64,000 bases of DNA, taken from positions 124,001-188,000 of IMG/VR virus record IMGVR_UViG_3300042691_042003; one strand, written 5' to 3'. A model generated the notes under the pieces. That model saw only the letters and a program-made list of their open reading frames with translations, was not told the DNA's origin and searched no databases. Of this stretch, positions 43,296-60,896 are shown one piece after another (the stretch's first letter is position 1; every line of letters begins with the position of its first letter). A program made the position numbers and the translations under genes.

Positions 43296-45632
43296 ATGAA
43301 CCTTAAATCACTCATTATTGGAGCACTCCTATTCATAGTTCCAATAATATCACATTCACAAACTACAGTCACGATTGGTGGTGGTGGTACAATTACTTGT
43401 CCCAATGTTCCAACAGCTACCTGGACTACACCTCCTTCAGGAGTAACCTTTTCAAATTGGTCAAGAGGATCAGGTGTTACTTGTGCTTCCTCTTCTGATG
43501 GACTTTCAGGTAGTGGATTTAATACTACTTCTTATACAGCTTCACACACATCGAACAAATTTTTTAGATTTACTCTTACCACAAATTCAATCACATCAGT
43601 AAGAGTTTCTGCACTTACTTGGTTAACGACGGTTAGTTCAGGAGGTGCAAATTTCACTATTGCCTATCAAAATGCAGGAGGACCTCTTACTCAATTTGGT
43701 TCAACTCTAACCAATCCAATCACAAATTCATTTACTGGAACAGTTACTATCGCTCCTAGTACATCATGTATATTTTTTCTTATTCCTTCAGGGACTAATA
43801 GTTCGACTCGAACTGTAAGACTAATAAATGGATCTACAATAACTCTAAATCCAGTTCCTGTAATTAATACGAGTGGATCTCTCTCTTCTCGTTCAACAGT
43901 ATATGGAACTCCTTCTACTTCAACCTCTTTCAGCGTATCAGGAACTAATCTCACAGGTGGAATTACTATAACTCCTCCTTCTGCATACGAGGTTTCAACC
44001 TCTAACACGTTTGCAACCGTAGGAACTTCCACCTCACCACTCATCATAGGCACTTCAGGAACCGTTTCTTCTACGACTATATTTGTTCGACTGAGAGAAA
44101 CAGCTGTTCCAGGAACCTATAACTCGCAATCAATTACTCTAACTGCAACGAATGCTACGACAAGAATCGTTAATACCGCTTCTTCAGGAAATATCGTAAG
44201 TACAAAGGCACTAACCATTTCATCTCCTTCAGTTGTAACAAAAACCTACGACGGAACAAATACAGCTACGATTGTAGGAACTCTTACAGGAACTATCGGT
44301 ACCGATGTAGTAACCTTTATAGGATCCGGAACCTTCTCATCAGTAAATGCAGGAACCGGTATTTCAGTAACATCTTCTGCCACTCTTTCAGGAACTCATG
44401 CTTCTCGATATACTCTGACACAACCAACAGGTCTTTTAGGAAATATTACTAAGGCTAATCAAACCATCTCATTTGAACAACTTCCTTACAAATCTTCTTT
44501 AGATCTCCCTTTTGCTCCTATTGCAAGTGCAACTTCAAACCTACCTTTAATTGTTACCTCATCTAATTCGTCAGTGGCTTCTATACTTTCAGGAGAAATA
44601 CAAATAAATGGAATTGGAACTACGACTATTACGATTTCACAAGGAGGGGATGGAAATTGGAATCCAGCTACTTCCGTTAGTCAAGATCTAATTATAGACT
44701 ATCCAATTTCTCGTTGGTCATTCGAAACCTCAACCGTTAGTGGGATCGGACAAACACCTTCAATATCTTCTCCTTCTGCTGAGATAGGAGAGCAAAATTC
44801 CAATACCTCATTTACAGGATTTCATACATCACCTCTCACTGTTTGGACAAATTTTGTAGGCAATGGAGATGGTCGTTCAATATCTGCTGATCGTTGGACC
44901 GTAGGAGATTATTTTCAATTTACTCTCAATACGAAATACACAACAATTATCCGTCTCTCTTTCGACCAAAATTCTTCAGCAACGGGTCCTAAAGATTTCA
45001 GATTGCAATGGTCAATTGACGGAACAAACTTCACTAATATTGAAGATTATCAAATAGCATATAATACCGCTTCTAATACAGTTTATTCTTGGACGGCTAC
45101 TAATTATTTCTCTCAATCTACTCTCTCTTTCGATCTCTCTACAATAACCGAAATAAACGATCAATCTCAAGTTTTCTTTCGTCTTCTTAACACAACAAAT
45201 GGAGCTTTGCTAGGAGGAACGGTACAAACTGCAGGAACTTCACGTATAGATAATTTCTCTCTATTTGGTTCATTAGATATTCCTCTTCCTTTACAAATTC
45301 TAGATTTTAAAGGAACAGCTTATGAAAGGCAAAATTTTCTAAGATGGACTTTATCAGAACAAATATCGGTAACCGTTCAAAAATATATCAACGGTTCTTG
45401 GAAGGATCTATCTACAATTGAGGATTCTCGTTACATAGATTCTTTACCGGAAAGAATTTCATACTATCGATTAGTAACTGATTCGAATATTTCTAAGCCT
45501 ATATACATTCTCAATTCGTCTGTAGAAGGAGAAGAATTTCAATACTTCGATCTAACAGGAAGGCCTAACGAAACCTCTAAAATCCTCGTTCGTAAGTCTG
45601 CTATCGATTCTAAAATAATTATTAAGAATTAA
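43296..45632 (+). CDS. Secreted multi-domain Ser/Thr-rich protein with YDG-like domain and a degenerate T9SS-type C-terminus
   Basis: Signal peptide; KTYDGTNTA; ITKANQTISF; PLPLQILDFKG; C-terminal YFDLTGR...KIIIKN. Confidence 0.75.
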   Translation: MNLKSLIIGALLFIVPIISHSQTTVTIGGGGTITCPNVPTATWTTPPSGVTFSNWSRGSGVTCASSSDGLSGSGFNTTSYTASHTSNKFFRFTLTTNSITSVRVSALTWLTTVSSGGANFTIAYQNAGGPLTQFGSTLTNPITNSFTGTVTIAPSTSCIFFLIPSGTNSSTRTVRLINGSTITLNPVPVINTSGSLSSRSTVYGTPSTSTSFSVSGTNLTGGITITPPSAYEVSTSNTFATVGTSTSPLIIGTSGTVSSTTIFVRLRETAVPGTYNSQSITLTATNATTRIVNTASSGNIVSTKALTISSPSVVTKTYDGTNTATIVGTLTGTIGTDVVTFIGSGTFSSVNAGTGISVTSSATLSGTHASRYTLTQPTGLLGNITKANQTISFEQLPYKSSLDLPFAPIASATSNLPLIVTSSNSSVASILSGEIQINGIGTTTITISQGGDGNWNPATSVSQDLIIDYPISRWSFETSTVSGIGQTPSISSPSAEIGEQNSNTSFTGFHTSPLTVWTNFVGNGDGRSISADRWTVGDYFQFTLNTKYTTIIRLSFDQNSSATGPKDFRLQWSIDGTNFTNIEDYQIAYNTASNTVYSWTATNYFSQSTLSFDLSTITEINDQSQVFFRLLNTTNGALLGGTVQTAGTSRIDNFSLFGSLDIPLPLQILDFKGTAYERQNFLRWTLSEQISVTVQKYINGSWKDLSTIEDSRYIDSLPERISYYRLVTDSNISKPIYILNSSVEGEEFQYFDLTGRPNETSKILVRKSAIDSKIIIKN

Positions 45633-45763
45633 TGGAATCTAAATTTAAATCTGAACTAGAAAAACTAGAAAAACTAGAATCCGAAAGAGATTCTAATTTT
45701 CCTTTAATTATTGCATTTGTTGCAATAGGAATAATGATAATAGGTTGTTATTTTCTATTCTAA
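45632..45763 (+). CDS. Small single-TM protein (not in the ORF track)
   Basis: MESKFKSELEKLEKLESERDSNFPLIIAFVAIGIMIIGCYFLF*; TAATG overlap. Confidence 0.55.
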   Translation: MESKFKSELEKLEKLESERDSNFPLIIAFVAIGIMIIGCYFLF

Positions 45764-45767
45764 TTGT

Positions 45768-45793
45768 AAGTCTCGATTCGTCGAGACTTTTTT
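45768..45793 (+). terminator. Intrinsic terminator
   Basis: AAGTCTCGA-TTCG-TCGAGACTT followed by a T run. Confidence 0.85.
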
Positions 45794-45846
45794 AGTCGGT
45801 AATTTTTTCGAATATATAATAAAAGGATTTATTTGAAGAAATACTT

Positions 45847-47751
45847 ATGAAATTAAGAAGAGTTAGCTTACGAAGCTCATCAAATATTCTAGCTAAAGGA
45901 TCTACTGCTCAAACGGGATATTTCTTAGGAGCCGGAGGAGACGGGAAGGTTGGATGGGCTTTAGGGTCTTCCGATAGAGCTGCTAATTCTACTCTAACTT
46001 ATGGAGAAGCAAAATTTCTTGCTACGAATGGATTGCTGACTGTCGGTTGTTTTTATAATATTAATTCTATTTTGTCTTATACTGGAAGAGATCCTGATGG
46101 ACAAATAATTAACATATACACGAGAGCGATTAGCTCAACTCAATTTAGTGAAAGCTGTTTTATTACGTTTTGGAATTGTGATTGGCAAGGAGTAGGAGAC
46201 TATACAGGTGCTCAAGGTAATTTTTATTCAACTCAATATCCTCAATGGAGATATGCTAAAGAAGCTCTATATGCTGAGAATGATGTAGTTATACATCGAA
46301 TATCAGAATCTGAACCTTATAGGATGTATATTTTATTAGATTCGGGAAGTCCAGCAGATCCAATAGGTCCTCAAGGTGGTTCTAGATGGAGCCTTCTTTC
46401 TTATTCTGATACTAACGGTTATATTAGAGAAATAAATGAATGTATTTGGAATTGGTCTGATAATAGATTAGAGAGTCGAAAATGTTCGAGAGGAAATGAA
46501 TATACTCTAACTAAAGACGATTGGAAATATAGAGATACAACAACCTATTTCGGTTATTTTATAGATGGTATTTTTGATCCAAACGTTTCAAATCCTATTT
46601 TACTCTTTCCTTGGGGAAGCGATAAACATAAAAACAATAAGATAATCAATTCGATTTTTTCTTCGAATTGTGATGAAGCAGAAGGTAATATTCTAATCAA
46701 CTCATCAAGAATTTATAATAATTATTACAATATCAATAATGCTAATGATACAGATCATTACATAAAAATAAATAATAATTTTTTAAGTGATCGAAGTGAC
46801 ATTACAGAAAATTTTAAAAGGGGATTTGATTATGTTATTACTCCAGAAGTTATTTTTAACGGAGACCTATCAAGAAATAAACTAACGAACGGTAGTTTTA
46901 TAAAAAGATTAGGATGTAATATTTATGGTACAACTACGAATTTTGAAATAACTAAAAATATTTTAGTCGAATCTCAATTAGGAGGTGGTGGAAATAATTA
47001 CGAACAAATATTTAGTGGAAGCTTTTATTTTAAAAATAATGTTTGTAACAAATTTAATTTTCAAGACAACATTCCCTTTCAAAATTCTAATGGAGAAATC
47101 ATGGATTTTGAAATCTCAGATAATGTCTTTAGTTATACTACTGTTGTAAATAATTCTTTTGGTTTAGTATCAATACAACAAAACGAAATAAATTATTCTA
47201 GATTTGAAGGAAATACATTAGGATATAACGGAGTCTCTTTTCTTATTTCTATCAAAAACAATTCCCTGAGCAATTTTTATTTTTACCTTTTTGATTACAA
47301 TAATAAAGACTCAGCATTTACTTTTTCAGATAATATATGTAAAGGAAGATTAGATGAAAACGATCCTACCACTACTTCAACTAAATTTGGAAATATGACA
47401 ATAGGAGGAGGCGTCGAATCTTTCTTTTCCGGTAATGTTCTTGATTCGCAAAGCTATTTTCTTGCAAATACAATTACAAACGATAGCTTAAGAGTAAGAA
47501 ATTGTCATTTTTATCCTTATTCAGGATTATTCGGATGTACATTATATGGAGGAGAAACGGTAATTTCTAATTGTATATTCAATACAACTTTAGATTTAAT
47601 AAATTTTGATGATGATCGAGTAGGTTTATACAATCTCAATTACACTAAAAATTTCTGGGATAATTCAACTAAGTCCTCTCAATTTTTATGGATTGCAAAT
47701 GACACTTCTCCTCTTTATATACAAATATATAACGTTGATGCAATTATATGA
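45847..47751 (+). CDS. Asn-rich right-handed beta-helix protein (paralog 1; probable fibre/adhesin)
   Basis: FWNCDWQGVGDY, FPWG, repeated N..I..N motifs. Confidence 0.65.
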   Translation: MKLRRVSLRSSSNILAKGSTAQTGYFLGAGGDGKVGWALGSSDRAANSTLTYGEAKFLATNGLLTVGCFYNINSILSYTGRDPDGQIINIYTRAISSTQFSESCFITFWNCDWQGVGDYTGAQGNFYSTQYPQWRYAKEALYAENDVVIHRISESEPYRMYILLDSGSPADPIGPQGGSRWSLLSYSDTNGYIREINECIWNWSDNRLESRKCSRGNEYTLTKDDWKYRDTTTYFGYFIDGIFDPNVSNPILLFPWGSDKHKNNKIINSIFSSNCDEAEGNILINSSRIYNNYYNINNANDTDHYIKINNNFLSDRSDITENFKRGFDYVITPEVIFNGDLSRNKLTNGSFIKRLGCNIYGTTTNFEITKNILVESQLGGGGNNYEQIFSGSFYFKNNVCNKFNFQDNIPFQNSNGEIMDFEISDNVFSYTTVVNNSFGLVSIQQNEINYSRFEGNTLGYNGVSFLISIKNNSLSNFYFYLFDYNNKDSAFTFSDNICKGRLDENDPTTTSTKFGNMTIGGGVESFFSGNVLDSQSYFLANTITNDSLRVRNCHFYPYSGLFGCTLYGGETVISNCIFNTTLDLINFDDDRVGLYNLNYTKNFWDNSTKSSQFLWIANDTSPLYIQIYNVDAII

Positions 47752-47765
47752 TTTAATTTTTTTAT

Positions 47766-49550
47766 ATGAGATTCGGTGATGTAAATTTTAATTCTTTTAT
47801 TTTAATAAACGGAGTGACTGGTCCTTCAGGGAGAGGGATAGAATATGGTCCTACTGGAGCTATAAGATTTGGAATTCCTTCTAGTTCAGGAATTACAGGT
47901 TCTACGGGAATTTCTTTCTTCTCTCCTTCTTATAGCGTTTTTAGAAATGCAATACTTACTAGAGATCTTTCTTTTCTAAACAATTACGATGCAATAGGAG
48001 TAAATATGCCTGGTTTTGGAGCAACTTCAAATCTTCAATCTGCGATATTTTTTAATCCTAATTCACAATCAACAAATGTTTGGAAAGGAGTAGGAATATT
48101 TTGGGATGCTGATTTTAATGACATAGGTGATTACACTAACGAACCTTTTATGGGAATTCGATACGGTATGTGGTTTCCTGGAGTCACTGCTGATGCTGAA
48201 ATTTTTCAAAACGGAAATGTTTTTATTTACTCTTCTGGAATTACAGGTCCTTACTTACATTATAAAGTTATAGATAAAACCAATCCTACAGATCCTCCTA
48301 ATGTAGACGATAAAACCTATCAAAAAATAACGATTTCAGACGGAAAAGGCTACATAAAAAATGCTGATCCTATGGAATGGGATTGGGAAAACAATCAGCT
48401 CATTTCTAGAAGCGATCAAATGGGAAATAGTTATCGAATAAGTAAATCCTCTGCTCAATCTTTAGGTTACACAGGATCTCCTATTTTTGGATTTCCATGG
48501 GGATCTGAAAGAGTTTACAATAATAAAATTGAGGGCTCTATTTTTTACTTAGGACATCTCCGAATAGATAATTACGGTTCAACCTCAGTTATGGTTACTA
48601 ATAATGATGTGTCTTCTTCATCTGTAGTAGTATTTAATTCTGAATCCTTTTCTGATTACGATCGAACGATAAAAAACAATATTTTTCAAAATTCAAATCT
48701 TGAATTTAATTCTTATCGATTGGTTGATTTTAATGAAAATGTTTTTATCGATTCCTCGATAGGAAATATAGGAATTACTTACAATCTTTCTTATGCAGGA
48801 CCTACTGCTTCGGTTAATAGAAATTACTTGATTGGATCTACTTTTGGGTCTTTTTCCATTTACTCTCCTTCATTTCAAATATCCGATAATTATCTAAATA
48901 ACTCTACTCTTCAATCTTTTGGGAATAATGTTGATTACGGAAGCAGCTTCTTTAGAAAAAATCTCGTAAACGGATCTTCTTTAAAAGTAGATTACTTATC
49001 CGGTAATGAAGCAAATTTCACATTCGAAAAAAATTATTTTAATCAAACGGTTTTAGGATTCACCGGTCAATTTTCGATAGTCTTTTCGGAAAATTACTTA
49101 AGTGGATCTACTGTAATTAATATGATTAGCGCAAAATCTAGTGAAGTAAAGAGAAATGTATTTGCAGGACTTGTAGAAAATATTGTTCTGACTAATGAAT
49201 CTCGAGCTGATATCCTTATTGAAAATTATTTTGAAAGAGGATCTATTCTGAAAAATTTTGAAATCCAAACTCGATTAGAGAAAAATCATCTCTCTACAGG
49301 AGTTCCTATTATTGCAGAAGATATAGGTGGTGGAAGATACACTACTGTTGATTTAGGAACAATTAGAGGAATTAATTGGAAACCGGGAGCTACAGGAGAT
49401 AAAGCTATTTTTACAACAACTGCTGGCAAATTCTACGTTGAAGAAATATCAAAAGATATTTCTCTAAACGATAAAGATCTTTACTCGAGCTCTATATTTG
49501 AAGATACAAATGCAGAAGAAAATTACTACTTAGGAATAATTAGGATTTAA
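47766..49550 (+). CDS. Beta-helix protein (paralog 2)
   Basis: FWDADFNDIGDY, FPWGSERVYNNKI, repeated F..N...S motifs, GxTG repeats. Confidence 0.65.
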   Translation: MRFGDVNFNSFILINGVTGPSGRGIEYGPTGAIRFGIPSSSGITGSTGISFFSPSYSVFRNAILTRDLSFLNNYDAIGVNMPGFGATSNLQSAIFFNPNSQSTNVWKGVGIFWDADFNDIGDYTNEPFMGIRYGMWFPGVTADAEIFQNGNVFIYSSGITGPYLHYKVIDKTNPTDPPNVDDKTYQKITISDGKGYIKNADPMEWDWENNQLISRSDQMGNSYRISKSSAQSLGYTGSPIFGFPWGSERVYNNKIEGSIFYLGHLRIDNYGSTSVMVTNNDVSSSSVVVFNSESFSDYDRTIKNNIFQNSNLEFNSYRLVDFNENVFIDSSIGNIGITYNLSYAGPTASVNRNYLIGSTFGSFSIYSPSFQISDNYLNNSTLQSFGNNVDYGSSFFRKNLVNGSSLKVDYLSGNEANFTFEKNYFNQTVLGFTGQFSIVFSENYLSGSTVINMISAKSSEVKRNVFAGLVENIVLTNESRADILIENYFERGSILKNFEIQTRLEKNHLSTGVPIIAEDIGGGRYTTVDLGTIRGINWKPGATGDKAIFTTTAGKFYVEEISKDISLNDKDLYSSSIFEDTNAEENYYLGIIRI

Positions 49551-49556
49551 TTTAGA

Positions 49557-51431
49557 ATGAGATACAACAGAATAAATATAACCGACGAAATCCGAGCAAG
49601 AGGAGCAACACCAGTTCCAGGTCAGGTGTTGAGTTTTAATTCAGAAGGCCTACCAATTTTTTTAACTCCTACTGAAAATACCTCTTCACCGACTGCAGCA
49701 CTAACCGATATTACTGCTTCTTTTTACACTCAGATAGTGAATGGAACGATAGGAGGATCGAGCAGATTTTACAGAATAACCAATGGCAATCAGATCAATT
49801 CAATCGTCGATCAGGTTATTGTAACTCATCCTACGTCTACAGGTCTTCTCAATCAAGAAGGACAATTTGGTAGATTTATAAATGCTGATTGGCAAGGAGT
49901 TGGTTCGTATGGAGGTGTCGAATCTCTTACTGGAATTCCTTTCGGATCAAATGCAGGTCTTTGGTCTTCTGGATACGATCCTTACATCTCTCTTGGACAG
50001 GTAGTTATTTACGGATCTACAGGAACTACAGGAGGATTTTTACATTATCAAATGGTTGATGCCGGAAGTCTAAACGGCACACCTCCTTCTGTAAACACTT
50101 CGGCTTACACACTTCTTCCAAAATCTGCTTCGGCAATAGGACAATACGGTTATGTAGAAAAGTGGTATAAGATACGACTAAATAGATATACATACACTCC
50201 TGGTGGAGACAGTCTTATTTTAAGTTCAGTAGAAGATGATCAAGGAAATTCTGTTTCAATTCCTCCTCATCGAGGATGGTTTGTATCATTCAGATCAAGC
50301 TTTGGAATAGACAATTGGTTCGCAGATGGTACAAATACAATCACTCATTTTCCTTGGGGAAGAGAAACCGTTAAGAACAATCGAATAGATGCCTCTTATA
50401 TAGATTTCTTCAACCTCAATTTCGACGCATTCGAATCAAATGAAATTCGTAATTCAGTCATTCATTTTAATACTTCCGTTTTCGCTGCTACAGATTCGGG
50501 AAATAAACTAGAGGCAATAGGTAATACTCTCTACAATTCGACTATTCAGAGCAACACCTTCTTCGAAAAACAAACAGGAGGTAGAAATCGATTCAACAAC
50601 AACGAACTAATCAATTCATCTATAGAGGACTCTTACTTCTTTGGAACCGACTTCAGCGAAAATCAAGTAATAAATAGCACGATAAGAGGACTTACTGGAA
50701 CCTACGACGAAGGATCTCCTGCTCGATCTTCATTTCAAAGAAACACTATAGCAAGCACTACTATAGAGAATCTAGAGCTTATTCCTTATCCAGGAATCAC
50801 TACCGAATTTGTAGATAATCACTTCTACAATTCTGCAATCACTTCGGTTAAGTTAAATCAAACTACATCTCCAGGAATTTCTAAAAATCTTCTACACGAT
50901 TCTCGTTTAGAAACTATACAATTAGAACCAGGTGCAAAAATTTTAAACAATCAACTCTTCTCTGCCACATTATCTTCTCAATTTGATACTACACCCTTAA
51001 TAAGTAACTCATCTATTTCTGAAAATAAACTCTTTCCAGGATCTCTTATCGCTTCATCATTTTCTGATTCAATGTACCTTACTACAATAGAAGGAAATCG
51101 ATTAGATCCTTCTTCATCTATACAAAATGTAACTCGTTCTTCTCCTAATACAGGATCTATCATTATTAAAGATAATATTCTTCATTCAGGATCTGGATTA
51201 TCTAATACAACTATTTCAGATGCCAATTCTTCTTACACGCTACAAAGAACAACATTCTCTCCTCTTGCACTAATAGTAGGTTCTTCTTTAACTGAAACAG
51301 CTTTTTCTTTAGAAGATCTTATTATTAATACAAAATCTCAAGTAGTGTATAAAGGAATAGACGACGGAGATAATCTAGGCTTATATACTCTAAGGATAGA
51401 CGGATCCAATACAGTCATTCGACAGGTATAA
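49557..51431 (+). CDS. Beta-helix protein (paralog 3)
   Basis: FINADWQGVGSY, FPWGRETVKNNRI, repeated N.L..S.I motifs. Confidence 0.65.
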   Translation: MRYNRINITDEIRARGATPVPGQVLSFNSEGLPIFLTPTENTSSPTAALTDITASFYTQIVNGTIGGSSRFYRITNGNQINSIVDQVIVTHPTSTGLLNQEGQFGRFINADWQGVGSYGGVESLTGIPFGSNAGLWSSGYDPYISLGQVVIYGSTGTTGGFLHYQMVDAGSLNGTPPSVNTSAYTLLPKSASAIGQYGYVEKWYKIRLNRYTYTPGGDSLILSSVEDDQGNSVSIPPHRGWFVSFRSSFGIDNWFADGTNTITHFPWGRETVKNNRIDASYIDFFNLNFDAFESNEIRNSVIHFNTSVFAATDSGNKLEAIGNTLYNSTIQSNTFFEKQTGGRNRFNNNELINSSIEDSYFFGTDFSENQVINSTIRGLTGTYDEGSPARSSFQRNTIASTTIENLELIPYPGITTEFVDNHFYNSAITSVKLNQTTSPGISKNLLHDSRLETIQLEPGAKILNNQLFSATLSSQFDTTPLISNSSISENKLFPGSLIASSFSDSMYLTTIEGNRLDPSSSIQNVTRSSPNTGSIIIKDNILHSGSGLSNTTISDANSSYTLQRTTFSPLALIVGSSLTETAFSLEDLIINTKSQVVYKGIDDGDNLGLYTLRIDGSNTVIRQV

Positions 51432-52216: not shown

Positions 52217-53290
52217 ATGGAAAAGATTAAAGCAACCAACGCCATTCTTATCAAAGCCAAGAAACGTCACGAGGCTTCTAAATTCGCAAAGCAATGGACC
52301 ATCGATAAGCCTTACGAGAAAGGTTACATATTTAAAGGACTCTTCCGTACCGGTCAACACTGGCTCGTTCAAAAAGGAAAAGAGTACTTCATAGATCCAA
52401 TCAATCAAATGCCGAAAAGCAAACCTCAACCCACGAAAGGAACCCCTTCTATACGTCTCGTTCAAATAGCTGATCTCAACTACGACGAGAACATCTTCAA
52501 ACCACTCAAAACTGGTGATTCCATCGATTACATGTTTTCATCAGACGGTGGAATCTTCCCTGCTACTAACTACATGATTATTGGGGATCCCGGCATTGGT
52601 AAATCTACTCAAACACTCGATATACTCGCTAAGATTAAGCGAAACGATCCTACTAAGAAAGTTCTCTTCATCTCTGGTGAAATGAATGAAATTGATATGT
52701 ATGGCTACGTTAAACGTTATCCGGCTTTCGGTCGAATCCCTACTCTCTTTCTCTGCGATTACCTTGATGAAAATCCGGCTAAGGTACTCGAAGAAACCTT
52801 CAAACAAGGTTGGGATCTAATACTTATCGACTCCTTCATCGAGGTACAAGAATCTATTCAAGCTGCTACCAACATGCCTCGTACAGCTGCTGAAAAATGG
52901 ATGATCGATCTAATGGTTACGAACAACAAAGGAAACAACCGAGAAAAACGTTACACTTCATTCCTTGCAATTCAACAAGTCACGAAAGGGGGTAACTTCG
53001 TCGGATCTAATAAATTGAAACACAACACTACCGGTATGATCGAGCTACGATACTCTTCTGAATTCTCTGGGGATCGTTTTGCTAAGGTAACTAAAAACCG
53101 TAGGGGCTTCAAATACGAGAAAATCTTCTTCTCACTCGACAATCCTAATCAAGTAGAATACGATGAAAAACGTCTACAACGAGATGAAGATATTCGTCAA
53201 CGTCTTCAAAAGGAAAAGGATATTCTCCTTTCCGAAGAAGAAAAATTCAATCAAATCTTTGGTCTTAACACAACAACAGTAGAAGAGTAA
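52217..53290 (+). CDS. RadA/Sms-like RecA-fold ATPase
   Basis: Walker A IGDPGIGKST, LFISGEM, Walker B LILIDS, QVTKGG.FVGS..LKH, KNRRG; no Lon domain. Confidence 0.78.
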   Translation: MEKIKATNAILIKAKKRHEASKFAKQWTIDKPYEKGYIFKGLFRTGQHWLVQKGKEYFIDPINQMPKSKPQPTKGTPSIRLVQIADLNYDENIFKPLKTGDSIDYMFSSDGGIFPATNYMIIGDPGIGKSTQTLDILAKIKRNDPTKKVLFISGEMNEIDMYGYVKRYPAFGRIPTLFLCDYLDENPAKVLEETFKQGWDLILIDSFIEVQESIQAATNMPRTAAEKWMIDLMVTNNKGNNREKRYTSFLAIQQVTKGGNFVGSNKLKHNTTGMIELRYSSEFSGDRFAKVTKNRRGFKYEKIFFSLDNPNQVEYDEKRLQRDEDIRQRLQKEKDILLSEEEKFNQIFGLNTTTVEE

Positions 53291-54285: not shown

Positions 54286-55371
54286 ATGGTTACACAAGCT
54301 CAGTACACTACCTTCAAGGAAGAAAGTCTACAAAATCAACCGATCCGTAAAAACATCCGTCTTACCGATCTTCAATTCGTTACACTCGATTGTGTTGAAT
54401 ACTCTGGTATTAAATTAGGAATCTCCAGAACAGCGCTCAAAGATCTACTCTCTATAGTTGGAATCTCGCTTTCTGGTATGAAAACTCTCGAATCCTCAAT
54501 CGGTGAGGAAGGGGCTAACAAGTTTCTCAATGCTCTAAAGAACGCAATTGGTTCTCACAAATCAGCCGAAGTTACCATCCTAGTAACACCAGATCGAGTA
54601 ATCTCAAGAATGCAAAAGACCGGTAAAATCGATCTTATCTCTGCTCCCACATTCTTCGATACCTTCGAAAGAATCATGAACACTCACTCTCTCGAAATCA
54701 AAGATATGTCCTTCAATAAGCAGAACGGTAATATCCACATCAACACTCACAAGCCGAAAGATCAATTCCAGGTAAATAATTTCAAAGATGAAATCTTTAC
54801 CACTGGTCTCAGTCTAAGTCGTACCATAGAGGGTATACAAGCCGATCCTTTTATGCACCGTCTCGTTTGCACTAATGGTATGGTAACTCGAGCCTTCGAT
54901 GAATCATTTAATCTACGTTCCCTCGAACCTAAGATGTGGAATGACTTCTTCCAACACCTCGAAAGGATCGAAAAATCCGGTTTTGTTCCTTCCAAATTTA
55001 CTGGTAAGGTTAATCAAGCAATGCAAACTCCTGCTTCTCTAGCCGAACTTGAAAGAGCCTCCAATCTCTTACTTAACAATTCCAACCTACCGGAAAACGA
55101 ACTGGAATTCTTCCTTAAGGGACACAAAAACACCTACAATCGATTACACTCTGCCGGTATCGACGAAACTAAATTGTCCACCGATCAGAAACGTAACCTA
55201 CGTACTGGTGTTAAAATGTGGGATCTAATCAATGGAATCACCGATTTCGCAAGTCACAACTACGGTTACGAAAAGAAACAAAATTCTGATCGTCACCTGC
55301 AAGTACAAGCTGGGGATCTACTTGCTAAAGGATTCGATACTCAAAACATCATCCTTAACCAGCCTTTCTAA
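54286..55371 (+). CDS. DUF932/TIGR03299-like phage protein
   Basis: RLVCTNGM; MWDLINGITDFASH. Confidence 0.7.
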   Translation: MVTQAQYTTFKEESLQNQPIRKNIRLTDLQFVTLDCVEYSGIKLGISRTALKDLLSIVGISLSGMKTLESSIGEEGANKFLNALKNAIGSHKSAEVTILVTPDRVISRMQKTGKIDLISAPTFFDTFERIMNTHSLEIKDMSFNKQNGNIHINTHKPKDQFQVNNFKDEIFTTGLSLSRTIEGIQADPFMHRLVCTNGMVTRAFDESFNLRSLEPKMWNDFFQHLERIEKSGFVPSKFTGKVNQAMQTPASLAELERASNLLLNNSNLPENELEFFLKGHKNTYNRLHSAGIDETKLSTDQKRNLRTGVKMWDLINGITDFASHNYGYEKKQNSDRHLQVQAGDLLAKGFDTQNIILNQPF

Positions 55372-55420
55372 CTTTTCCGTGAAGCCACACGTTCTAAACG
55401 TGTTTTAATTTGATCAACAG

Positions 55421-55444
55421 AGGACTCCTACTAGGGGTCCTTTT
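55421..55444 (+). terminator. Intrinsic terminator
   Basis: AGGACTCC-TACTA-GGGGTCCT followed by TTT. Confidence 0.7.
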
Positions 55445-55450
55445 GTTGTC

Positions 55451-55925
55451 AGTACTTCTAGTGGGTAAGACCATTAGTAGAGTGGGTCTTACTCGTACTA
55501 GATGGATTACCACTTTAGTACACTACTCTCTAGTACTAGTAGTGGTGCTTAGCTAGTCTGTGCCATTAGTAGACACCACTTTAAAAGACTAGTAATGAAA
55601 GGCACTTTAGTACACTACCAGCTAGTGTTAGTAGTGAACTAGACCGGATAGGTACCATTAGTAGTGCACTAGTACTGATGTACACTACTAGTTAGATTGA
55701 TTAGACTACTAGTAGAGGATTGATCTAATTGAATTAGACCTAGTTGGTTATTTTTGATTATTGTAGAAGTGGTTATAGGGTGTGCTAGATCAGTATAGAC
55801 CAAAAAAGACCAATCTAGATGGTTTTAGACTATATAGGATGGTATAGAGTGGTTTTAGGGTCATATAAGGCCATTTTAGACTATTTTAGCCATTCTAGAT
55901 GGTTTTTAACCACTTTAGTGGGTAT
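55451..55925. repeat. Non-coding CTAG-rich region with a degenerate 92-bp tandem repeat
   Basis: CCATTAGTAG at 55471, 55563 and 55655; CACTTTAGTACACTAC at 55511 and 55603; TCTAGATGGTTTT at 55814 and 55894. Confidence 0.8.
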
Positions 55926-56257
55926 AGCTATGCATATCAGATCCCCAGGGTCAAGTAGCGTTAACGTCACGAAGGTCATCCTAGCCGGCTCGAGGCCATG
56001 CGATTCCGGAACTCGCCGATCCACGAAACCTTTGGCCTGACATTGGAGATCTCTGGTAATCTCGTTCTCTGGTATCTTCCTCTCAATACCCTCTGTTTCA
56101 CTCCGTTACTCACCGATTTCCCCTTTAGTAATACCTTATATACGAGTATCCGTTGTACCTGAGGACCCTCTCGATGTTCACCCCACGACCTTTAGTCACT
56201 CTGCCTTAATCCGTTATGAAAAATTTTTTTTCCAGATTTCTCGGATAAATCGTATAC

Positions 56258-56407
56258 ATGAGAGTAAATAAATTAAAAGCTCTCATGTTACACTCTATTC
56301 GCACCTTCTTCACCATGTTAGCTTCATTCCTCTTCTTCTATGTGGTTTTCCCTGCTCTGTTTTACCTTCTGTTTAACCGCGATCGTCGCAGCCGTGATGA
56401 TGAGTGA
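56258..56407 (+). CDS. Small single-TM protein (not in the ORF track)
   Basis: MRVNKLKALMLHSIRTFFTMLASFLFFYVVFPALFYLLFNRDRRSRDDE*. Confidence 0.45.
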   Translation: MRVNKLKALMLHSIRTFFTMLASFLFFYVVFPALFYLLFNRDRRSRDDE

Positions 56408-56495
56408 TCGAAGAACCTCTGGTAAAACCGAGCCCTCCGCGAAAGTGCGGTCGAGAAAAATCCCCCGTACTCGAAGCATTAGTGCGAATCGTAGG

Positions 56496-56524
56496 AAAAC
56501 CGGTAGGTGACGAATACATATAAT
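56496..56524 (+). promoter_or_regulatory. Candidate class II promoter AAAAC-N16-CATATAAT
   Basis: Repeated motif before ATG 56547. Confidence 0.45.
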
Positions 56525-56546
56525 ATATAGTTTATACACTTTTAGT

Positions 56547-56918
56547 ATGCAAGTTGAAAAAACAAGAAGAGTGAAGAGTAAGTCGAAAGCTTCGATTAAA
56601 GATTGGACAGTTCTCTACTGCAGAACGACTAGAGAGGTAGAGGATGCTATCAGAGACAAGAGATTTATTCATTCTCATATTATACGTGCGGTAAAGCGAA
56701 TGCTAAAGAAGAGAGTCACAACCGATATGTGCCTTGAAATCTACTGTATTGCTGATAGTACCTCATTCTGGATTTCTGTTAAGCTCGATGATTATGAAGA
56801 GGTTCTCGATCTGATTCTACGTCATTTAGAAGAGAGAGAAGAATATGAGGAATGTGCAGAAATAGTAAAGCTGATGGAAGGATGTAAAGTCCTAAAAAAA
56901 GAGCTAGAAGAAGAATGA
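56547..56918 (+). CDS. Hypothetical protein with C-terminal UVR-like motif
   Basis: LEEREEYEECAEIVKL. Confidence 0.65.
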   Translation: MQVEKTRRVKSKSKASIKDWTVLYCRTTREVEDAIRDKRFIHSHIIRAVKRMLKKRVTTDMCLEIYCIADSTSFWISVKLDDYEEVLDLILRHLEEREEYEECAEIVKLMEGCKVLKKELEEE

Positions 56919-57958: not shown

Positions 57959-59554
57959 ATGAAAAAACTCTTTTTAATTCTGCTCACGGTTGCCAGTTTT
58001 CTGTCAATCTCTCCTGCTCAAGCTGTTGATTGGGCAGTTGTTTGTGTAAAGCAAGGCCCTGCTAGAGGTTATGTTGCTGGCAATCTCAGACCTGGTCATA
58101 TTGCTAAACCTCTTCGTATGCTCGATCCTTTAGCAACGACTATTCCTTCTGTTGCCGGTAATGGATATCCTGTTCCTCCTCGTTCTCTTCCACAAAGAGC
58201 TCTTGTTGCTGAACAATCCGATATTTCAGGTGATATGAATTTCTTCGCTCTCGGATTTGGTGGTCAAATCGTAATGAGATCTTCCGAATGGATTATGAAT
58301 GGTCCTGGAACCGACTTTACTGTATTTGAAACTACATGGGGTGATCCTTCTTGTCGTCCTTCAAATTCCGAACAAGCTCTTATTGAGATTTCCGAAGATG
58401 GTGTTAATTGGATGACTCCTGGTTCTTTAAGTACAGGTCTTGGAGGTGCTTATAACTCTTGTTATAATGGTTCATTCGATATCACACCTCTTATGAAGAT
58501 TCAATTTATACGTATTACTGATCGTACTAATCCTGATTGGAGAGTTCAAGGTGATGGCAATGATGGTTATGATGTAGATGGTATCGTTGTAAATTATTCT
58601 CTTCCACCTACTGCATTTTCTGCTCCACAATCACCTATATGTGATTATCAGCAAGGAGTTGCTTCTCAATATGTAGGTGCTGCAGGAAATTTCCCTGGTC
58701 GTGGAATTGTTTCGACTCGTAAGAATTTCTCTAAAGCTAATATTAATGAAGATGGATTCCCCACTGCTGCAATGACTAATCCTGGTCTTCGTGATTCCGG
58801 TCCTGCTAGTGGATCTTATAATTTCTTCTCTCTCGGTTTTGGTGGTTGGGCTTGTCTTCAACTTCCTTATACTGTGTTTAATGGTCCTGGTCCTGAATTC
58901 TATTCATTCGAAACGACTTGGAATAATCAGCCTTGTCCTAATTATCCAGAAAGAGCTAATGTTTCGGTTTCGGTTGATGGAACAAATTGGTCTTCAACTG
59001 TACTAATTTGTAAAGATGCTCTTGGTATTGTTGGAACCTCTTCAGCTATTGATTTATCTTCATTCGGACCTGAATTCTCTATGGTTAATTTTATTCGTTT
59101 TCAAGAAGCATCTAATCCTGCTGATTTTGGTGGAGGTGCTGATGGTTATGATATGGATAATATTGTTATTTCTCAGCTACCACCTCCTACTCCAAGTGCT
59201 ACACCAACTGGATTTTCTTGTGAAACGATTACCTCAAATCGTATTGCTATCGTAGAAGGTCAAAACACTTATATGGATGGTGGAATTCCTGAAGAGATGT
59301 TTCCTCTCGAAATCGTAGGAGGAAATGTAGTTACTGATAAGCTTTCTTTCTTTGCAACTATCGCTGAAGAAGGAACCTATCATTACACTGTAAGAAGCTA
59401 TCAAGGAACTTTTGTTTCTGAAGGTCTTCTTCAAGGATCTCTTTTCGAAACACCTACTACAGAAGTTGATGTTAGGAATTTTAGTAATGGAGTTTACTTC
59501 TTAACTCTCTCTTCTAATACAACTAAAGAAACCGTTAAGTTCGTAAAGAACTAA
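57959..59554 (+). CDS. Secreted protein with two repeated domains and a T9SS type-A C-terminal sorting domain
   Basis: Signal peptide; FFALGFGG/FFSLGFGG, FETTW and ADGYD/DGYDVDG repeats; C-terminus VDVRNFSNGVYFLTL...TVKFVKN. Confidence 0.8.
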   Translation: MKKLFLILLTVASFLSISPAQAVDWAVVCVKQGPARGYVAGNLRPGHIAKPLRMLDPLATTIPSVAGNGYPVPPRSLPQRALVAEQSDISGDMNFFALGFGGQIVMRSSEWIMNGPGTDFTVFETTWGDPSCRPSNSEQALIEISEDGVNWMTPGSLSTGLGGAYNSCYNGSFDITPLMKIQFIRITDRTNPDWRVQGDGNDGYDVDGIVVNYSLPPTAFSAPQSPICDYQQGVASQYVGAAGNFPGRGIVSTRKNFSKANINEDGFPTAAMTNPGLRDSGPASGSYNFFSLGFGGWACLQLPYTVFNGPGPEFYSFETTWNNQPCPNYPERANVSVSVDGTNWSSTVLICKDALGIVGTSSAIDLSSFGPEFSMVNFIRFQEASNPADFGGGADGYDMDNIVISQLPPPTPSATPTGFSCETITSNRIAIVEGQNTYMDGGIPEEMFPLEIVGGNVVTDKLSFFATIAEEGTYHYTVRSYQGTFVSEGLLQGSLFETPTTEVDVRNFSNGVYFLTLSSNTTKETVKFVKN

Positions 59555-59927: not shown

Positions 59928-60896
59928 ATGAAAAGAATTTTTTATCTCATTGGAGCTCTCTTCCTTTTTTCTTCTTGTCGCAGAGAAGACATGGAAATCA
60001 AAAACCCGGAAACCTCTCCATCGGTTGAAGTAAGACAATGTGCTTCTATGGATGTTCTTCAAAAACAACTACAAGAAGATCCTCAACTTCAATCTCGTAT
60101 GGATGAAATCGAAACCAATCTTGAAAAGAATCAAAATCTTATGAAGATGGGTCGATTAGTAAATGGTGTTTATGAAATTCCTGTTTGGGTTAATGTTCTT
60201 TATAGAACATCTGCTGAAAATATTTCTCAAACTCAAATTCAATCTCAGATTGATGTACTTAACGAAGATTTCGGAGGAACAAATACAGATAATGTTTTAG
60301 TCCCTTCTACTTTTTCAACATTGAAAGCCGGAAATTGTAATATCCGTTTTGTTCTACAAGGTGTTACTCGTAAATCAACTACGAAAACTTCTTGGAGGAC
60401 TGATAATTCTATGAAGATTTCTTCTAAGGGAGGAATTAATCCTACTTCGCCTACGATATATTTAAATCTATGGGTCTGCACTCTCGCTAATGGTATTCTA
60501 GGTTATGCTCAATTTCCAGGAGGATCTTCATCAACTGATGGTGTTGTTATTCTAAATACTGCCTTTGGTAGAACAGGAACTGCTACAGCTCCTTTCAATA
60601 AAGGTCGAACTGCTACTCATGAAGTTGGTCATTGGTTAAACCTTCGTCATATTTGGGGTGATGCTACTTGTGGTTCTGATTTAGTTAACGATACACCAAC
60701 TCATAATACTGCTAATTACGGTTGTCCAGCAGCTGGTCATCGTTCAACTTGTACTGGAACTCCAATTGAAATGTGGATGAATTACATGGATTACACTGAC
60801 GATGCTTGTATGTATATGTTTTCTACTGGTCAAAAATCTAGAATGTTAGCTACTTTTGCTTCAGGAGGTGGAAGAACATCGTTTGCTCAACCTTAA
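59928..60896 (+). CDS. M43 (pappalysin/ulilysin-like) zinc metalloprotease, lipoprotein
   Basis: Lipobox FSSC; IPVWVNV, LGYAQFP, DGVVI, HEVGHWLNLRHIWG, NYMDYTDD. Confidence 0.92.
   Translation: MKRIFYLIGALFLFSSCRREDMEIKNPETSPSVEVRQCASMDVLQKQLQEDPQLQSRMDEIETNLEKNQNLMKMGRLVNGVYEIPVWVNVLYRTSAENISQTQIQSQIDVLNEDFGGTNTDNVLVPSTFSTLKAGNCNIRFVLQGVTRKSTTKTSWRTDNSMKISSKGGINPTSPTIYLNLWVCTLANGILGYAQFPGGSSSTDGVVILNTAFGRTGTATAPFNKGRTATHEVGHWLNLRHIWGDATCGSDLVNDTPTHNTANYGCPAAGHRSTCTGTPIEMWMNYMDYTDDACMYMFSTGQKSRMLATFASGGGRTSFAQP

What the first reader, a model, noticed from the sequence alone, without database searches (positions are those of the whole stretch)
55451..55925. CTAG-saturated non-coding region with a hidden 92-bp periodicity: candidate origin or packaging/terminus site
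Seen: 15 CTAG in about 445 nt (hand count). CCATTAGTAG occurs at 55471, 55563 and 55655 (exact 92-nt steps). CACTTTAGTACACTAC occurs at 55511 and 55603 (92 nt apart), within a 34-nt stretch matching 29/34. There is a hairpin GGGTAAGACC/GGTCTTACTC, and TCTAGATGGTTTT at 55814 and 55894. No credible ORF is present, and it follows a terminator. Known: CTAG is usually under-represented in prokaryotic DNA, and iteron arrays mark origins and terminase-binding sites. Inference: a cis-acting DNA element (origin, pac/terminal region, or injection-control signal), or a decoy array titrating a host CTAG-recognising enzyme.
Basis: partly seen in the sequence, partly recalled or inferred. Interest (0 to 1): 0.72.

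Follow-up and report, generated by a model that had tools for sequence, protein, structure and literature searches.

The report
CTAG-rich phased DNA array in jumbo phage
The largest gene-free stretch of an uncultivated 246-kb freshwater phage holds a fast-evolving array of short CTAG-centred palindromes and curved DNA beside a conserved unique core; it looks like a protein-binding control or origin region, its function is unproven, and the layout recurs in two distant phage clades.

Summary
There are 15 CTAG in 55451-55925, which is the genome-wide maximum (16 per 475 nt against 7 for the next window). The 92-nt steps are exact, but the two full units are only 57-66% alike. Beneath them lies a spacing of about one helical turn (~10.25 bp), the strongest such signal in the 246-kb genome and carried mainly by phased T-tracts in 55746-55957.

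The array lies in the largest intergenic gap (55372-56546), between a DUF932-like gene and a conserved 123-aa gene. The gap has a terminator, a variable zone, a unique conserved core (55947-56048), an A/T-run-CCAGA block and a promoter-like box.

In relatives the variable zone cannot be aligned. It is still CTAG-enriched about 4-12-fold in most, and it is absent in three. A second clade, whose DUF932 protein is only 28-31% identical, has the same layout with TCTAGA-type sites.

I found no RNA family, no conserved RNA structure, no DNA methylase, no DnaA boxes, no global skew switch, and no nearby terminase or replisome genes.

Best reading (confidence ~0.35): a double-stranded-DNA scaffold for a dimeric binding protein plus bent DNA. 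It would be the variable accessory part of a non-coding control region that probably contains the replication origin. A purely transcriptional operator or enhancer array is nearly as likely. Read-end evidence could not be obtained.

The parts
52217..53290 (+). RecA-superfamily (RadA/Sms-, KaiC-like) P-loop ATPase gene. It travels with the module in the second clade.
   Evidence: Weak Pfam and PHROG P-loop hits. 47-48% identical homologues lie about 0.7 kb upstream of the DUF932 gene in L025, L026, L029, L036 and L078. Names given by JGI are listed.
54286..55371 (+). DUF932-like gene (361 aa), the conserved left neighbour of the non-coding region.
   Evidence: Pfam DUF932 is sub-threshold at E 0.05. 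The AF2 model (pLDDT 82) matches AFDB DUF932 clusters at E 1e-17. More than 100 homologues exist. A gene-free gap follows the gene in relatives.
55403..55414 (+). Conserved box TTTTAATTTGAT just after the stop codon.
   Evidence: Present at the same place in L006, L008, L010, L011 and L133, as a variant in L132 and L064, and shortened in L014. It is the reverse complement of the 3' end of the dispersed class A promoter-like element.
55421..55449 (+). Terminator-like hairpin plus T-run, the left border of the variable zone.
   Evidence: Read from the sequence. A hairpin plus T-run sits at the same place in all relatives. A strain in run X13 diverges from position 55461.
55451..55745 (.). Part A: the CTAG-rich array, with 13 CTAG. 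Sites are of TACTAGTA type and occur in both orientations. It includes the 92-nt units 55471-55562 and 55563-55654, and the hairpin 55460-55494.
   Evidence: ACTAGT occurs 5 times here against 28 in the rest of the 246-kb genome.
55746..55946 (.). Part B: T-tracts and GGTTTTAG-type boxes spaced at about 10.25 bp, inferred to be intrinsically curved DNA. It includes the 80-nt duplicates 55768-55847 and 55848-55927.
   Evidence: Using short lags only, z is 16 at 10.25 bp. TTT has Rayleigh R 0.76 and TTTT has R 0.95. Relatives carry phased A-tracts at the same place.
55947..56048 (+). Conserved core, one copy per genome. It holds the palindrome CGTTAACG, a short GC hairpin followed by CATG, and an ATTCCGGA unit.
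   Evidence: nhmmer finds one hit in the genome at E 4e-23. It is present in L006-L016, L063, L064, L069, L070 and L087 and in L132-L134, and is aligned. The related core of the second clade is shown.
56050..56084 (+). 15-nt tandem repeat, 2.2 copies, directly after the core.
56134..56144 (+). Conserved box CCTTATATACG.
   Evidence: Seen in the window and in L006, L007, L008 and L133 by inspection.
56218..56236 (+). A-run, T-run, CCAGA block. It resembles the upstream half of the class A promoter-like element and the 47-nt tandem unit of L029.
   Evidence: Local GC is 29% over 56200-56299.
56258..56407 (+). Small hydrophobic ORF (49 aa). Its status as a gene is uncertain. A hairpin (56256-56288) lies at its start.
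   Evidence: It has no family hit.
56514..56524 (+). ATACATATAAT box (class B promoter-like), 22 nt before the next gene.
   Evidence: TACATATAAT occurs 13 times in the genome, always on the + strand and always just before an ATG. It is conserved at this place in relatives.
56547..56918 (+). Conserved 123-aa gene, the right neighbour of the non-coding region.
   Evidence: 50% identical to the gene after the gap in L006. It has no family hit.

Best explanation
Shown: the CTAG-rich stretch is the variable, accessory half of a conserved non-coding control region. It works, if at all, as double-stranded DNA.

Inferred mechanism:
- Part A (55451-55745) is an array of short palindromic sites with an invariant CTAG centre and lineage-specific flanks. 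A dimeric, sequence-specific phage protein would bind them.
- Part B (55746-55946) is intrinsically bent DNA with A/T-tracts spaced one helical turn apart.
- Together they would fold into a wrapped or looped protein-DNA complex. That complex would deliver or hold factors at the adjacent single-copy core (55947-56048) and at the A/T-run block (56218-56236).

Committed guess (inference only): this region is the phage's replication-origin and early-control region. The core plus the A/T-rich block would be the essential part. The CTAG array would be a replaceable loading or enhancer platform. This resembles iterons and bent DNA beside a plasmid or lambda origin, or the variable enhancer beside the conserved origin core in a polyomavirus control region.
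For: - Position: it is the largest intergenic gap of a genome that is 91% coding and almost entirely on one strand.
- CTAG density is the genome maximum.
- The motifs are local, not dispersed.
- The ~10.25-bp periodic power is the highest of about 2,460 windows: 0.551 against a median of 0.087. Coding controls show none. The signal persists with short lags only.
- The same layout follows the DUF932-like gene in clade I. It also appears in a second clade at 28-31% protein identity, with TCTAGA-type sites (13 CTAG per 500 nt against 2.3 background).
- CTAG excess recurs in unalignable zones: 16/1.35, 14/1.39, 15/1.36, 11/2.45 and 9/2.08 observed/expected.
- Symmetric consensus flanks differ by lineage: TACTAGTA, GTCTAGAC, CTCTAGAG.
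- The core is single-copy and conserved.
- Unit repeats occur beside the core, up to 4.9 copies of 47 nt in L029.
- An A/T-rich stretch follows, with 29% GC.
- No other large repeat-bearing gap lies near the replisome genes.
- A RecA-like ATPase travels with the module in the second clade.
- Fold z-scores are similar on both strands, as expected for DNA-level inverted repeats.
Against: - No initiator protein has been identified. DUF932 has no known function, and its OB-fold-like N-domain is only a weak match (Z 5.7-6.8).
- DnaB and PolB lie about 110 kb away.
- There are no DnaA boxes.
- Cumulative GC3 skew has its global extremes near 160 kb and 0 kb. The 180-kb point is only a local minimum, explained by the end of a C-skewed gene block.
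- The variable zone is missing in three clade I relatives (L132, L063, L064) and short in P0004. The CTAG array itself therefore cannot be essential.
- Promoter-like boxes inside the region fit a purely transcriptional role equally well.
- In part A alone the periodicity is modest: z 6.4 at 9.5 bp.
Confidence: 0.35

Rival explanations
1. Purely transcriptional control region. The CTAG palindromes would be operators, and the bent DNA an upstream element or loop-forming silencer, for promoters in and after the core. The whole would act as an early-to-middle switch or an insulator between two transcription units.
For: - It lies between a terminator and promoter-like boxes.
- It sits in the genome segment that carries about 17 class A promoter-like elements.
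- The A/T-run-CCAGA block and the 47-nt units resemble the upstream half of those elements.
- The zone is dispensable in some relatives.
- Strains swap the zone as a cassette between 55461 and 55954. Phage immunity or operator regions behave this way (own knowledge).
Against: - No repressor-like gene was found beside it: Pfam and PHROGs are empty for the small neighbours.
- The core is single-copy, unlike the two dispersed promoter classes.
- 500 bp is long for an operator region.
Confidence: 0.25
2. Terminal, packaging or injection-control site. The region would mark the inner border of a long terminal repeat that collapsed in the assembly, like the repeat-laden injection stop region of T5 or the short-repeat arrays beside the T7 terminal repeats.
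For: - Contig depth drops about two-fold at ~56,000-56,100 in runs X1 and X2, and contigs break there.
- All five clade II contigs examined have the locus within 8 kb of a contig end.
- Early-type genes surround it.
Against: - X1 and X2 may be one sample, and a mixture of strains explains the depth step as well.
- The clade II contigs are 22-45% fragments from a region full of dispersed repeats that break assemblies.
- In clade I, independent contigs share ends 38-40 kb or 119 kb away from the locus.
- The terminase gene is 76 kb away.
- No read ends could be examined.
Confidence: 0.1
3. Centromere-like or nucleoid-anchoring scaffold. A partition or architectural protein would coat the phased sites, as ParR does on R1 parC.
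For: Short sites in both orientations with spacing of about one helical turn over several hundred bp.
Against: No ParA/ParM/ParB/ParR-type hit among the neighbours. The genome looks like that of a lytic jumbo phage. The zone is absent in some relatives.
Confidence: 0.08
4. No function of its own. The stretch would be decayed tandem duplications in a recombination-prone spacer.
For: The 92-nt and 80-nt duplications are decayed. The zone varies from 0 to about 600 nt and is replaced between strains.
Against: CTAG excess and ~10-bp phasing recur independently in zones that cannot be aligned, across two clades. Decay would not recreate them.
Confidence: 0.05
5. Non-coding RNA gene, or a recoded (TAG-read-through) ORF.
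For: The + strand folds better than shuffles, z -5.0. A TAnnTTTG-like box precedes the hairpin.
Against: - No Rfam hit at either threshold.
- Consensus folds of the core are only -2.3 and -1.6 kcal/mol, with little covariation.
- z-scores are similar on both strands and near zero in several relatives.
- Stops of all three kinds fill all six frames, and there is no suppressor tRNA.
Confidence: 0.04
6. Decoy that titrates a host CTAG-recognising enzyme, or a methylation-controlled site in the manner of GATC clusters in oriC or the P1 pac site.
For: 12-fold CTAG enrichment.
Against: No DNA methylase of three major families is encoded in the phage. The flanks are lineage-specific, and some relatives use GACTGTC- or GCAGTC-type motifs without CTAG. 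The number of sites is too small to titrate anything.
Confidence: 0.02

Closest known systems
Iteron-type origins with bent DNA (lambda ori, pSC101, P1 oriR, T4 oriE). Comparison from own knowledge.
   Same: A unique non-coding site. Repeated protein-binding sites spaced in helical turns. Intrinsic A/T-tract bending. An adjacent A/T-rich stretch and promoters. Site specificity that differs between related replicons.
   Different: There are no 17-22-bp direct iterons in the window. The sites are 6-10-bp palindromes in both orientations. No recognised initiator gene and no DnaA boxes are present. The replisome genes lie far away. The array is dispensable in some relatives.
Polyomavirus non-coding control region. 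Comparison from own knowledge.
   Same: A conserved origin-type core with palindromes and an A/T tract lies beside a repeat-built block. That block is rearranged or replaced between strains, and promoters lie in the same region.
   Different: The polyomavirus is a eukaryotic virus with a known initiator (large T antigen). The analogy concerns layout only and implies no homology.
T5 injection-stop region and the T7 short-repeat arrays beside the terminal repeats. Comparison from own knowledge.
   Same: A long gene-free stretch packed with short repeats and palindromes next to early genes.
   Different: Physical ends are unknown here. No DnaA boxes are present. Contig ends of clade I relatives lie elsewhere.
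GATC clusters in E. coli oriC and the P1 pac site. Comparison from own knowledge.
   Same: About a ten-fold local excess of a 4-bp palindrome in a cis-acting site.
   Different: Those clusters work through Dam methylation. No methylase gene is found here, and some relatives replace CTAG by other motifs.
R1 parC and other RHH-protein site arrays; P2 Cox and 186 Apl box arrays. Comparison from own knowledge.
   Same: Many short boxes spaced one helical turn apart, which wrap or bend DNA into a higher-order complex.
   Different: No cognate small DNA-binding gene has been recognised. The array here is longer and less regular.

Membership tests
Iteron-type replication origin | Several direct repeats of about 17-22 bp spaced in whole helical turns | tested here: inconclusive
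   The window has short palindromic sites and decayed 92- and 80-nt duplications, but no iterons by TRF. L029 has 4.9 copies of a 47-nt unit beside the core. Spacing of about 10 bp is shown.
Iteron-type replication origin | Adjacent A/T-rich unwinding stretch | tested here: inconclusive
   An A-run/T-run block sits at 56218-56236 and GC is 29% over 56200-56299. Unwinding was not tested.
Iteron-type replication origin | Cognate initiator gene beside the site | tested here: inconclusive
   The conserved neighbours are a DUF932-like protein of unknown function and a RecA-like ATPase. No known Rep family is hit.
Iteron-type replication origin | Host DnaA boxes | tested here: not met
   No TTATCCACA match with up to 1 mismatch lies in 55372-56546.
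Iteron-type replication origin | Strand-composition switch or mapped replication start | tested here: not met
   Global GC3-skew extremes lie near 160 kb and 0 kb, and 180 kb is only a local minimum. Replication starts cannot be mapped with these tools.
pac or cos packaging site, or genome terminus | Read starts pile up, or a coverage block ends, at the site | not testable with these tools
   Only Logan contigs were served. A roughly two-fold contig-depth step at ~56,000-56,100 is suggestive but ambiguous.
pac or cos packaging site, or genome terminus | Site lies in or beside the terminase genes | tested here: not met
   The large terminase gene lies at genome position 103.5 kb, 76 kb away.
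CRISPR array or regular tandem array | Near-identical repeats at regular spacing | tested here: not met
   TRF finds nothing in 55372-55957. The units are 57-66% alike.
Structured non-coding RNA | Match to a family, or conserved structure with covariation | tested here: not met
   Rfam gives no hit. RNAalifold gives -2.3 and -1.6 kcal/mol. z-scores do not differ by strand.
Partition centromere (parC- or parS-like) | Adjacent partition ATPase and centromere-binding genes | tested here: not met
   No such Pfam or PHROG hit among the neighbouring ORFs.
Methylation-controlled site (Dam/GATC-like logic) | A methylase that recognises the clustered palindrome | tested here: not met
   PF01555, PF02086 and PF00145 are absent from the phage genome. 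The host methylome is not testable.
Operator array of a phage repressor | Palindromic sites overlapping promoters, with the repressor gene adjacent | tested here: inconclusive
   Palindromic sites are shown. Promoter-like boxes lie more than 200 nt away. No HTH or RHH hit occurs in the neighbours, and a TrpR-type search was empty.

The most novel reading that the evidence does not exclude
The DUF932-like protein, with or without the RecA-like ATPase that travels with it, is the factor that binds the CTAG-centred sites. With the conserved core it would form a previously unrecognised origin or recombination-start module of large phages. That would give a first function to DUF932, a domain widespread in phages, plasmids and integrative elements.
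Probability: 0.12. Interest if true: 0.8.

Novelty: new variant of a known kind. Interest (0 to 1): 0.5.

Why it matters
Cis-acting sites of uncultivated jumbo phages are almost unknown. This one has a defined layout: terminator, variable palindrome array, bent DNA, single-copy core, A/T block and promoter. The layout is conserved across two clades whose linked protein is only about 28% identical, so it can be recognised in other metagenomic phage genomes.

If it is the origin or the main early control region, it gives a handle for building replicons or reporters for these phages. It also ties a testable DNA partner to the DUF932 family, which has no known function.

The strain-level replacement of the array between fixed borders suggests selection for changing specificity, such as incompatibility or immunity between co-infecting relatives. 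That can be tested by population genomics.

Tried and rejected
- DNA search of the phage collection: no match. The only protein-level relative there, LR756508.1, has no such zone.
- Exact 16-mer scan of viral contigs: four chance hits only.
- tRNA and Rfam scans of the region: empty.
- Sigma-70 promoter scan: 0 hits.
- Another genetic code: not pursued. The tRNA set has no suppressor, the genome is 91% coding under table 11, and all three stop codons fill the region.
- RNA consensus structure of the core on both strands: negligible.
- DNA methylases, TrpR-like repressor and DnaA boxes: absent.
- Foldseek search of the PDB for the DUF932-like model: nothing at E <= 0.001.
- VIA wide search: only middling OB-fold matches.
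- Literature: DUF932 has no described function. A search on CTAG and origins gave nothing relevant.
- Read laying: gave contigs only, so there is no read-end test.
- The 357-aa genes downstream of the gap in L006, L009 and L010 are not homologues of the window's ATPase.
- Proximity of the clade II loci to contig ends: judged not reliable as evidence for a terminus, because those contigs are fragments from a repeat-rich region.

Full report
WHAT THE WINDOW IS

The window is bases 124,001-188,000 of a 246,081-bp virus record.
- GC content is 31%.
- The two ends of the record overlap inside a collagen-like repeat gene.
- Under table 11 the genome is 91% coding, and almost every gene is on the + strand.
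- It carries five tRNAs and a tmRNA but no suppressor tRNA.
- PolB and DnaB lie at 60-69 kb and the large terminase gene at 103.5 kb.
- A protein with a type IX secretion sorting domain and an M43 peptidase lie just downstream of the finding. They suggest a Bacteroidota host.
- Public runs that hold the sequence come from fresh water, lakes and aquaculture.

CHECK OF THE OBSERVATION

- 15 CTAG lie between 55458 and 55895, against about 1.2 expected. No other 475-nt window of the genome has more than 7.
- The 10-mer at 55471, 55563 and 55655 and the 16-mer at 55511 and 55603 are exact 92-nt steps.
- The 92-nt lag is the top 4-mer autocorrelation peak: 0.075 against a shuffle maximum of 0.020.
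- The two full units are only 57% (ungapped) to 66% (gapped) identical. The third shares only 10 nt, and Tandem Repeats Finder reports nothing. This is one old duplication.
- A second old duplication, of 80 nt, covers 55768-55927.
- CTAG is only mildly depleted in the genome, at 0.8-0.9 of expectation. The cluster is remarkable because of its local excess, not because CTAG is forbidden elsewhere.

ANATOMY

The finding sits in the largest intergenic gap of the genome, 55372-56546, which is 1,175 nt long. From left to right it contains:
- the stop codon of a DUF932-like gene;
- a conserved box, TTTTAATTTGAT (55403-55414);
- a terminator-like hairpin with a T-run (55421-55449);
- part A (55451-55745), rich in CTAG;
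- part B (55746-55946), with T-tracts and GGTTTTAG-type boxes;
- a conserved core (55947-56048) with the palindrome CGTTAACG, a short GC hairpin followed by CATG, and an ATTCCGGA unit;
- a G-poor stretch on the + strand, which folds less well than shuffles (z +1.97);
- a conserved CCTTATATACG box;
- an A-run, T-run, CCAGA block (56218-56236) in a 29% GC stretch;
- a small hydrophobic ORF of doubtful status;
- an ATACATATAAT box (56514-56524);
- a conserved 123-aa gene.

The motifs of parts A and B are local and are not spread over the genome. The core occurs once in the genome.

PHASING BY THE HELICAL TURN

The top autocorrelation lags in the window are 92, 80, 30, 51 and 21 nt, which are near-multiples of about 10.2.
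- A Fourier analysis of 4-mer recurrence peaks at 10.25 bp with z 21.8. Coding controls reach z 2.3 at most at that period.
- In a scan of about 2,460 windows of the whole genome, the window starting at 55501 has the highest power: 0.551 against a median of 0.087 and a 99th percentile of 0.301.
- TAG, TAGA, TT and TTT occupy preferred phases, with Rayleigh R of 0.52-0.86.
- With short lags only (6-70 nt), which removes any effect of the two duplications, the signal remains at z 14.7. It comes mainly from part B (z 16 at 10.25 bp). Part A alone is modest, at z 6.4 at 9.5 bp.
- I therefore claim spacing of about one helical turn, and I read phased A/T-tracts as intrinsic curvature. The curvature is an inference and was not measured.

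RELATIVES, CLADE I

The DUF932-like protein has more than 100 homologues. In every relative with enough flanking DNA, its gene is followed by a gene-free stretch of 830-1,025 nt with the same order of blocks.
- The core, the A/T-run-CCAGA block and the ATACATATAAT box can be aligned. The stretch between the terminator and the core cannot.
- That stretch is nevertheless enriched in CTAG. Observed against expected counts are: window 16/1.35, L010 14/1.39, L014 15/1.36, L087 11/2.45, L011 9/2.08. L065 has 13 CTAG in 587 nt.
- L006, L008 and L133 instead repeat GACTGTC- or GCAGTC-type words.
- The ~10-bp spacing recurs in L014, L087, L006, L010 and L065, with z 8.8-24.6. L008 is weaker (z 7.2, peaking at 11.25 bp) and L011 shows none.
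- Three relatives have almost no variable zone. One of them is L132, the window's nearest relative on the protein tree at 74% identity. There the terminator is followed within about 35-140 nt by the core. A 78% relative has a gap of only 409 nt.
- In run X13 a related strain matches the window up to 55461 and again from 55954 but differs in between. Between strains the zone therefore behaves as a replaceable cassette with fixed borders.

RELATIVES, CLADE II

DUF932 homologues at only 28-31% identity occur in L021, L025, L026-L028, L036, L078, L081 and L029. Each is also followed by about 1 kb without genes (L021: about 550 nt).
- In most of them the layout is a box and terminator, a zone rich in TCTAGA, a core that shares GGCCCATG and AAATTCC-GG units, a CATATAAT box and then the next gene.
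- The zone has 13 CTAG per 500 nt against a background of 2.3, and periodicity z of 3-9.5.
- L029 is poorer in CTAG (5 per 500 nt) and lacks the CATATAAT box. Beside its core it carries 4.9 tandem copies of a 47-nt unit. That unit resembles the clade I core unit and the A/T-run-CCAGA block.
- On the protein tree the two clades are each well supported (100/99 and 100/100). They are separated by clades whose genes have no such gap.
- Apart from the DUF932-like gene, the only neighbour shared by both clades is a RecA-superfamily ATPase. It is 47-48% identical and lies 0.7-1 kb upstream.
- Around the invariant CTAG, the symmetric consensus differs by lineage: TACTAGTA in the window, GTCTAGAC in L010 and L065, TCTAGA in L014 and L087, CTCTAGAG in clade II. 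Binding sites of a dimeric protein that co-evolves with its sites would show this pattern.

RNA OR DNA

- Rfam has no match at either threshold.
- Consensus folding of the core gives -2.3 and -1.6 kcal/mol with little covariation.
- The variable zone folds better than shuffles on both strands: -5.0 and -2.85 in one run, -4.3 and -3.7 in another. In relatives the two strands behave alike or show nothing.
- This is what inverted copies of a DNA motif produce. It is not the signature of a strand-specific RNA.

TESTS OF SPECIFIC FUNCTIONS

- Origin. Total and third-position GC skew show only a local minimum at 180 kb, caused by the end of a 14-kb block of C-skewed genes. The global extremes lie near 160 kb and 0 kb. 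There are no DnaA boxes. The replisome genes are far away.
- Packaging or terminus. The terminase gene is 76 kb away. Contig depth falls about two-fold at ~56,000-56,100 in two runs, and contigs break there, but mixed strains explain this as well. Clade II contigs have the locus within 8 kb of an end, but they are fragments from a region full of dispersed repeats. Clade I contigs from independent samples share ends 38-40 kb or 119 kb away from the locus. Read ends could not be examined.
- Methylation or decoy. No methylase of three major families is present.
- Transcription. Two dispersed promoter-like classes exist. One is a ~70-nt element with about 17 copies. The other is TACATATAAT, with 13 copies. 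All copies of both are on the + strand. The region ends with a box of the second class, and it contains a block that resembles the upstream half of the first.

THE NEIGHBOURING PROTEIN

The 361-aa protein is a remote DUF932 member.
- The Pfam match has E 0.05. The structural match to AFDB DUF932 clusters has E 1e-17.
- No solved structure matches by Foldseek.
- A wider structural search gives OB-fold domains (RPA70 C-terminal DNA-binding domain, Teb1, CST) for residues 19-115 at Z 5.7-6.8. By the tool's own note this is only a lead.
- The literature held here gives no function for DUF932.

VERDICT

Shown:
- a real, statistically extreme, non-coding DNA feature;
- a conserved layout in two deep clades;
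- a variable zone that keeps its CTAG-centred palindromes and helical-turn spacing while its sequence turns over.

Inferred:
- the zone is a protein-binding and bending scaffold that serves the adjacent single-copy core.

Guessed (0.35):
- the whole region is the origin and early-control region.

A purely transcriptional role (0.25) and a terminal or injection-control role (0.10) remain open. This is a new variant of known kinds of cis-acting repeat arrays, and I rate its interest as moderate.

Noticed in passing
window 39358, 51708, 52201, 53657, 53939 and onward (genome 163-230 kb): About 17 copies of a ~70-nt promoter-like element (T-run, TTGTATTATATTAGCTAT, ATCAAATTAA, then an ATG within ~20 nt). 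All copies are on the + strand. Assembled contigs of public runs pile up and break at these copies.
   Followed up: partly
window 21194, 54256, 56515 and 10 other genome sites: TACATATAAT occurs 13 times, always on the + strand and 15-35 nt before a start codon. This is a second promoter-like class, and it is conserved in relatives.
   Followed up: partly
window ~56,000-56,100: Contig depth in runs X1 and X2 drops from about 7-9 to about 2-4, and contigs break between 55998 and 56114. This could be a terminal-repeat border or a mixture of strains.
   Followed up: partly
window 55461 and 55954: A related strain in run X13 matches the window up to 55461 and again from 55954, with unlike sequence in between. 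The variable zone is swapped as a cassette.
   Followed up: partly
genome 225490-225887 (outside the window): The phage carries a tmRNA gene and five tRNAs (Met x2, Leu x2, Arg).
   Followed up: no
genome ends (1-200 and 245,880-246,081): The record's ends overlap by about 70 nt inside a collagen-like Gly-x-y repeat gene. The 'direct terminal repeat' label is therefore probably an assembly circle rather than a physical end.
   Followed up: partly
window 57959-59554 and 59928-60896: One protein has an F5/8 type C domain and a type IX secretion sorting tail. It is followed by an M43 metallopeptidase. Both point to a Bacteroidota host.
   Followed up: no
window 43296-51431: Four large ORFs (594-778 aa) have no family hit. 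Their GC3 is high (0.29) and their GC3 skew strongly negative (-0.375). They cause the local skew dip that ends at the finding.
   Followed up: partly
genome 60011-60367 and 65347-66069: DNA polymerase B matches fall in two separate ORFs 5 kb apart. The gene is either split or interrupted.
   Followed up: no
L029:2537-2767: 4.9 tandem copies of a 47-nt unit (AAATTTTTCCGGCCAGAA... type) lie beside the core of a clade II relative. These are the clearest iteron-like repeats found in the family.
   Followed up: partly
window 56258-56407: A 49-aa hydrophobic ORF lies behind the A/T-run-CCAGA block, with a 9-bp-stem hairpin over its start. Whether it is a gene is unknown.
   Followed up: no
window 54286-55371 (protein residues 19-115): The N-terminal domain of the DUF932-like model resembles RPA-type OB folds at Z 5.7-6.8. 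This is a weak hint of nucleic-acid binding.
   Followed up: partly
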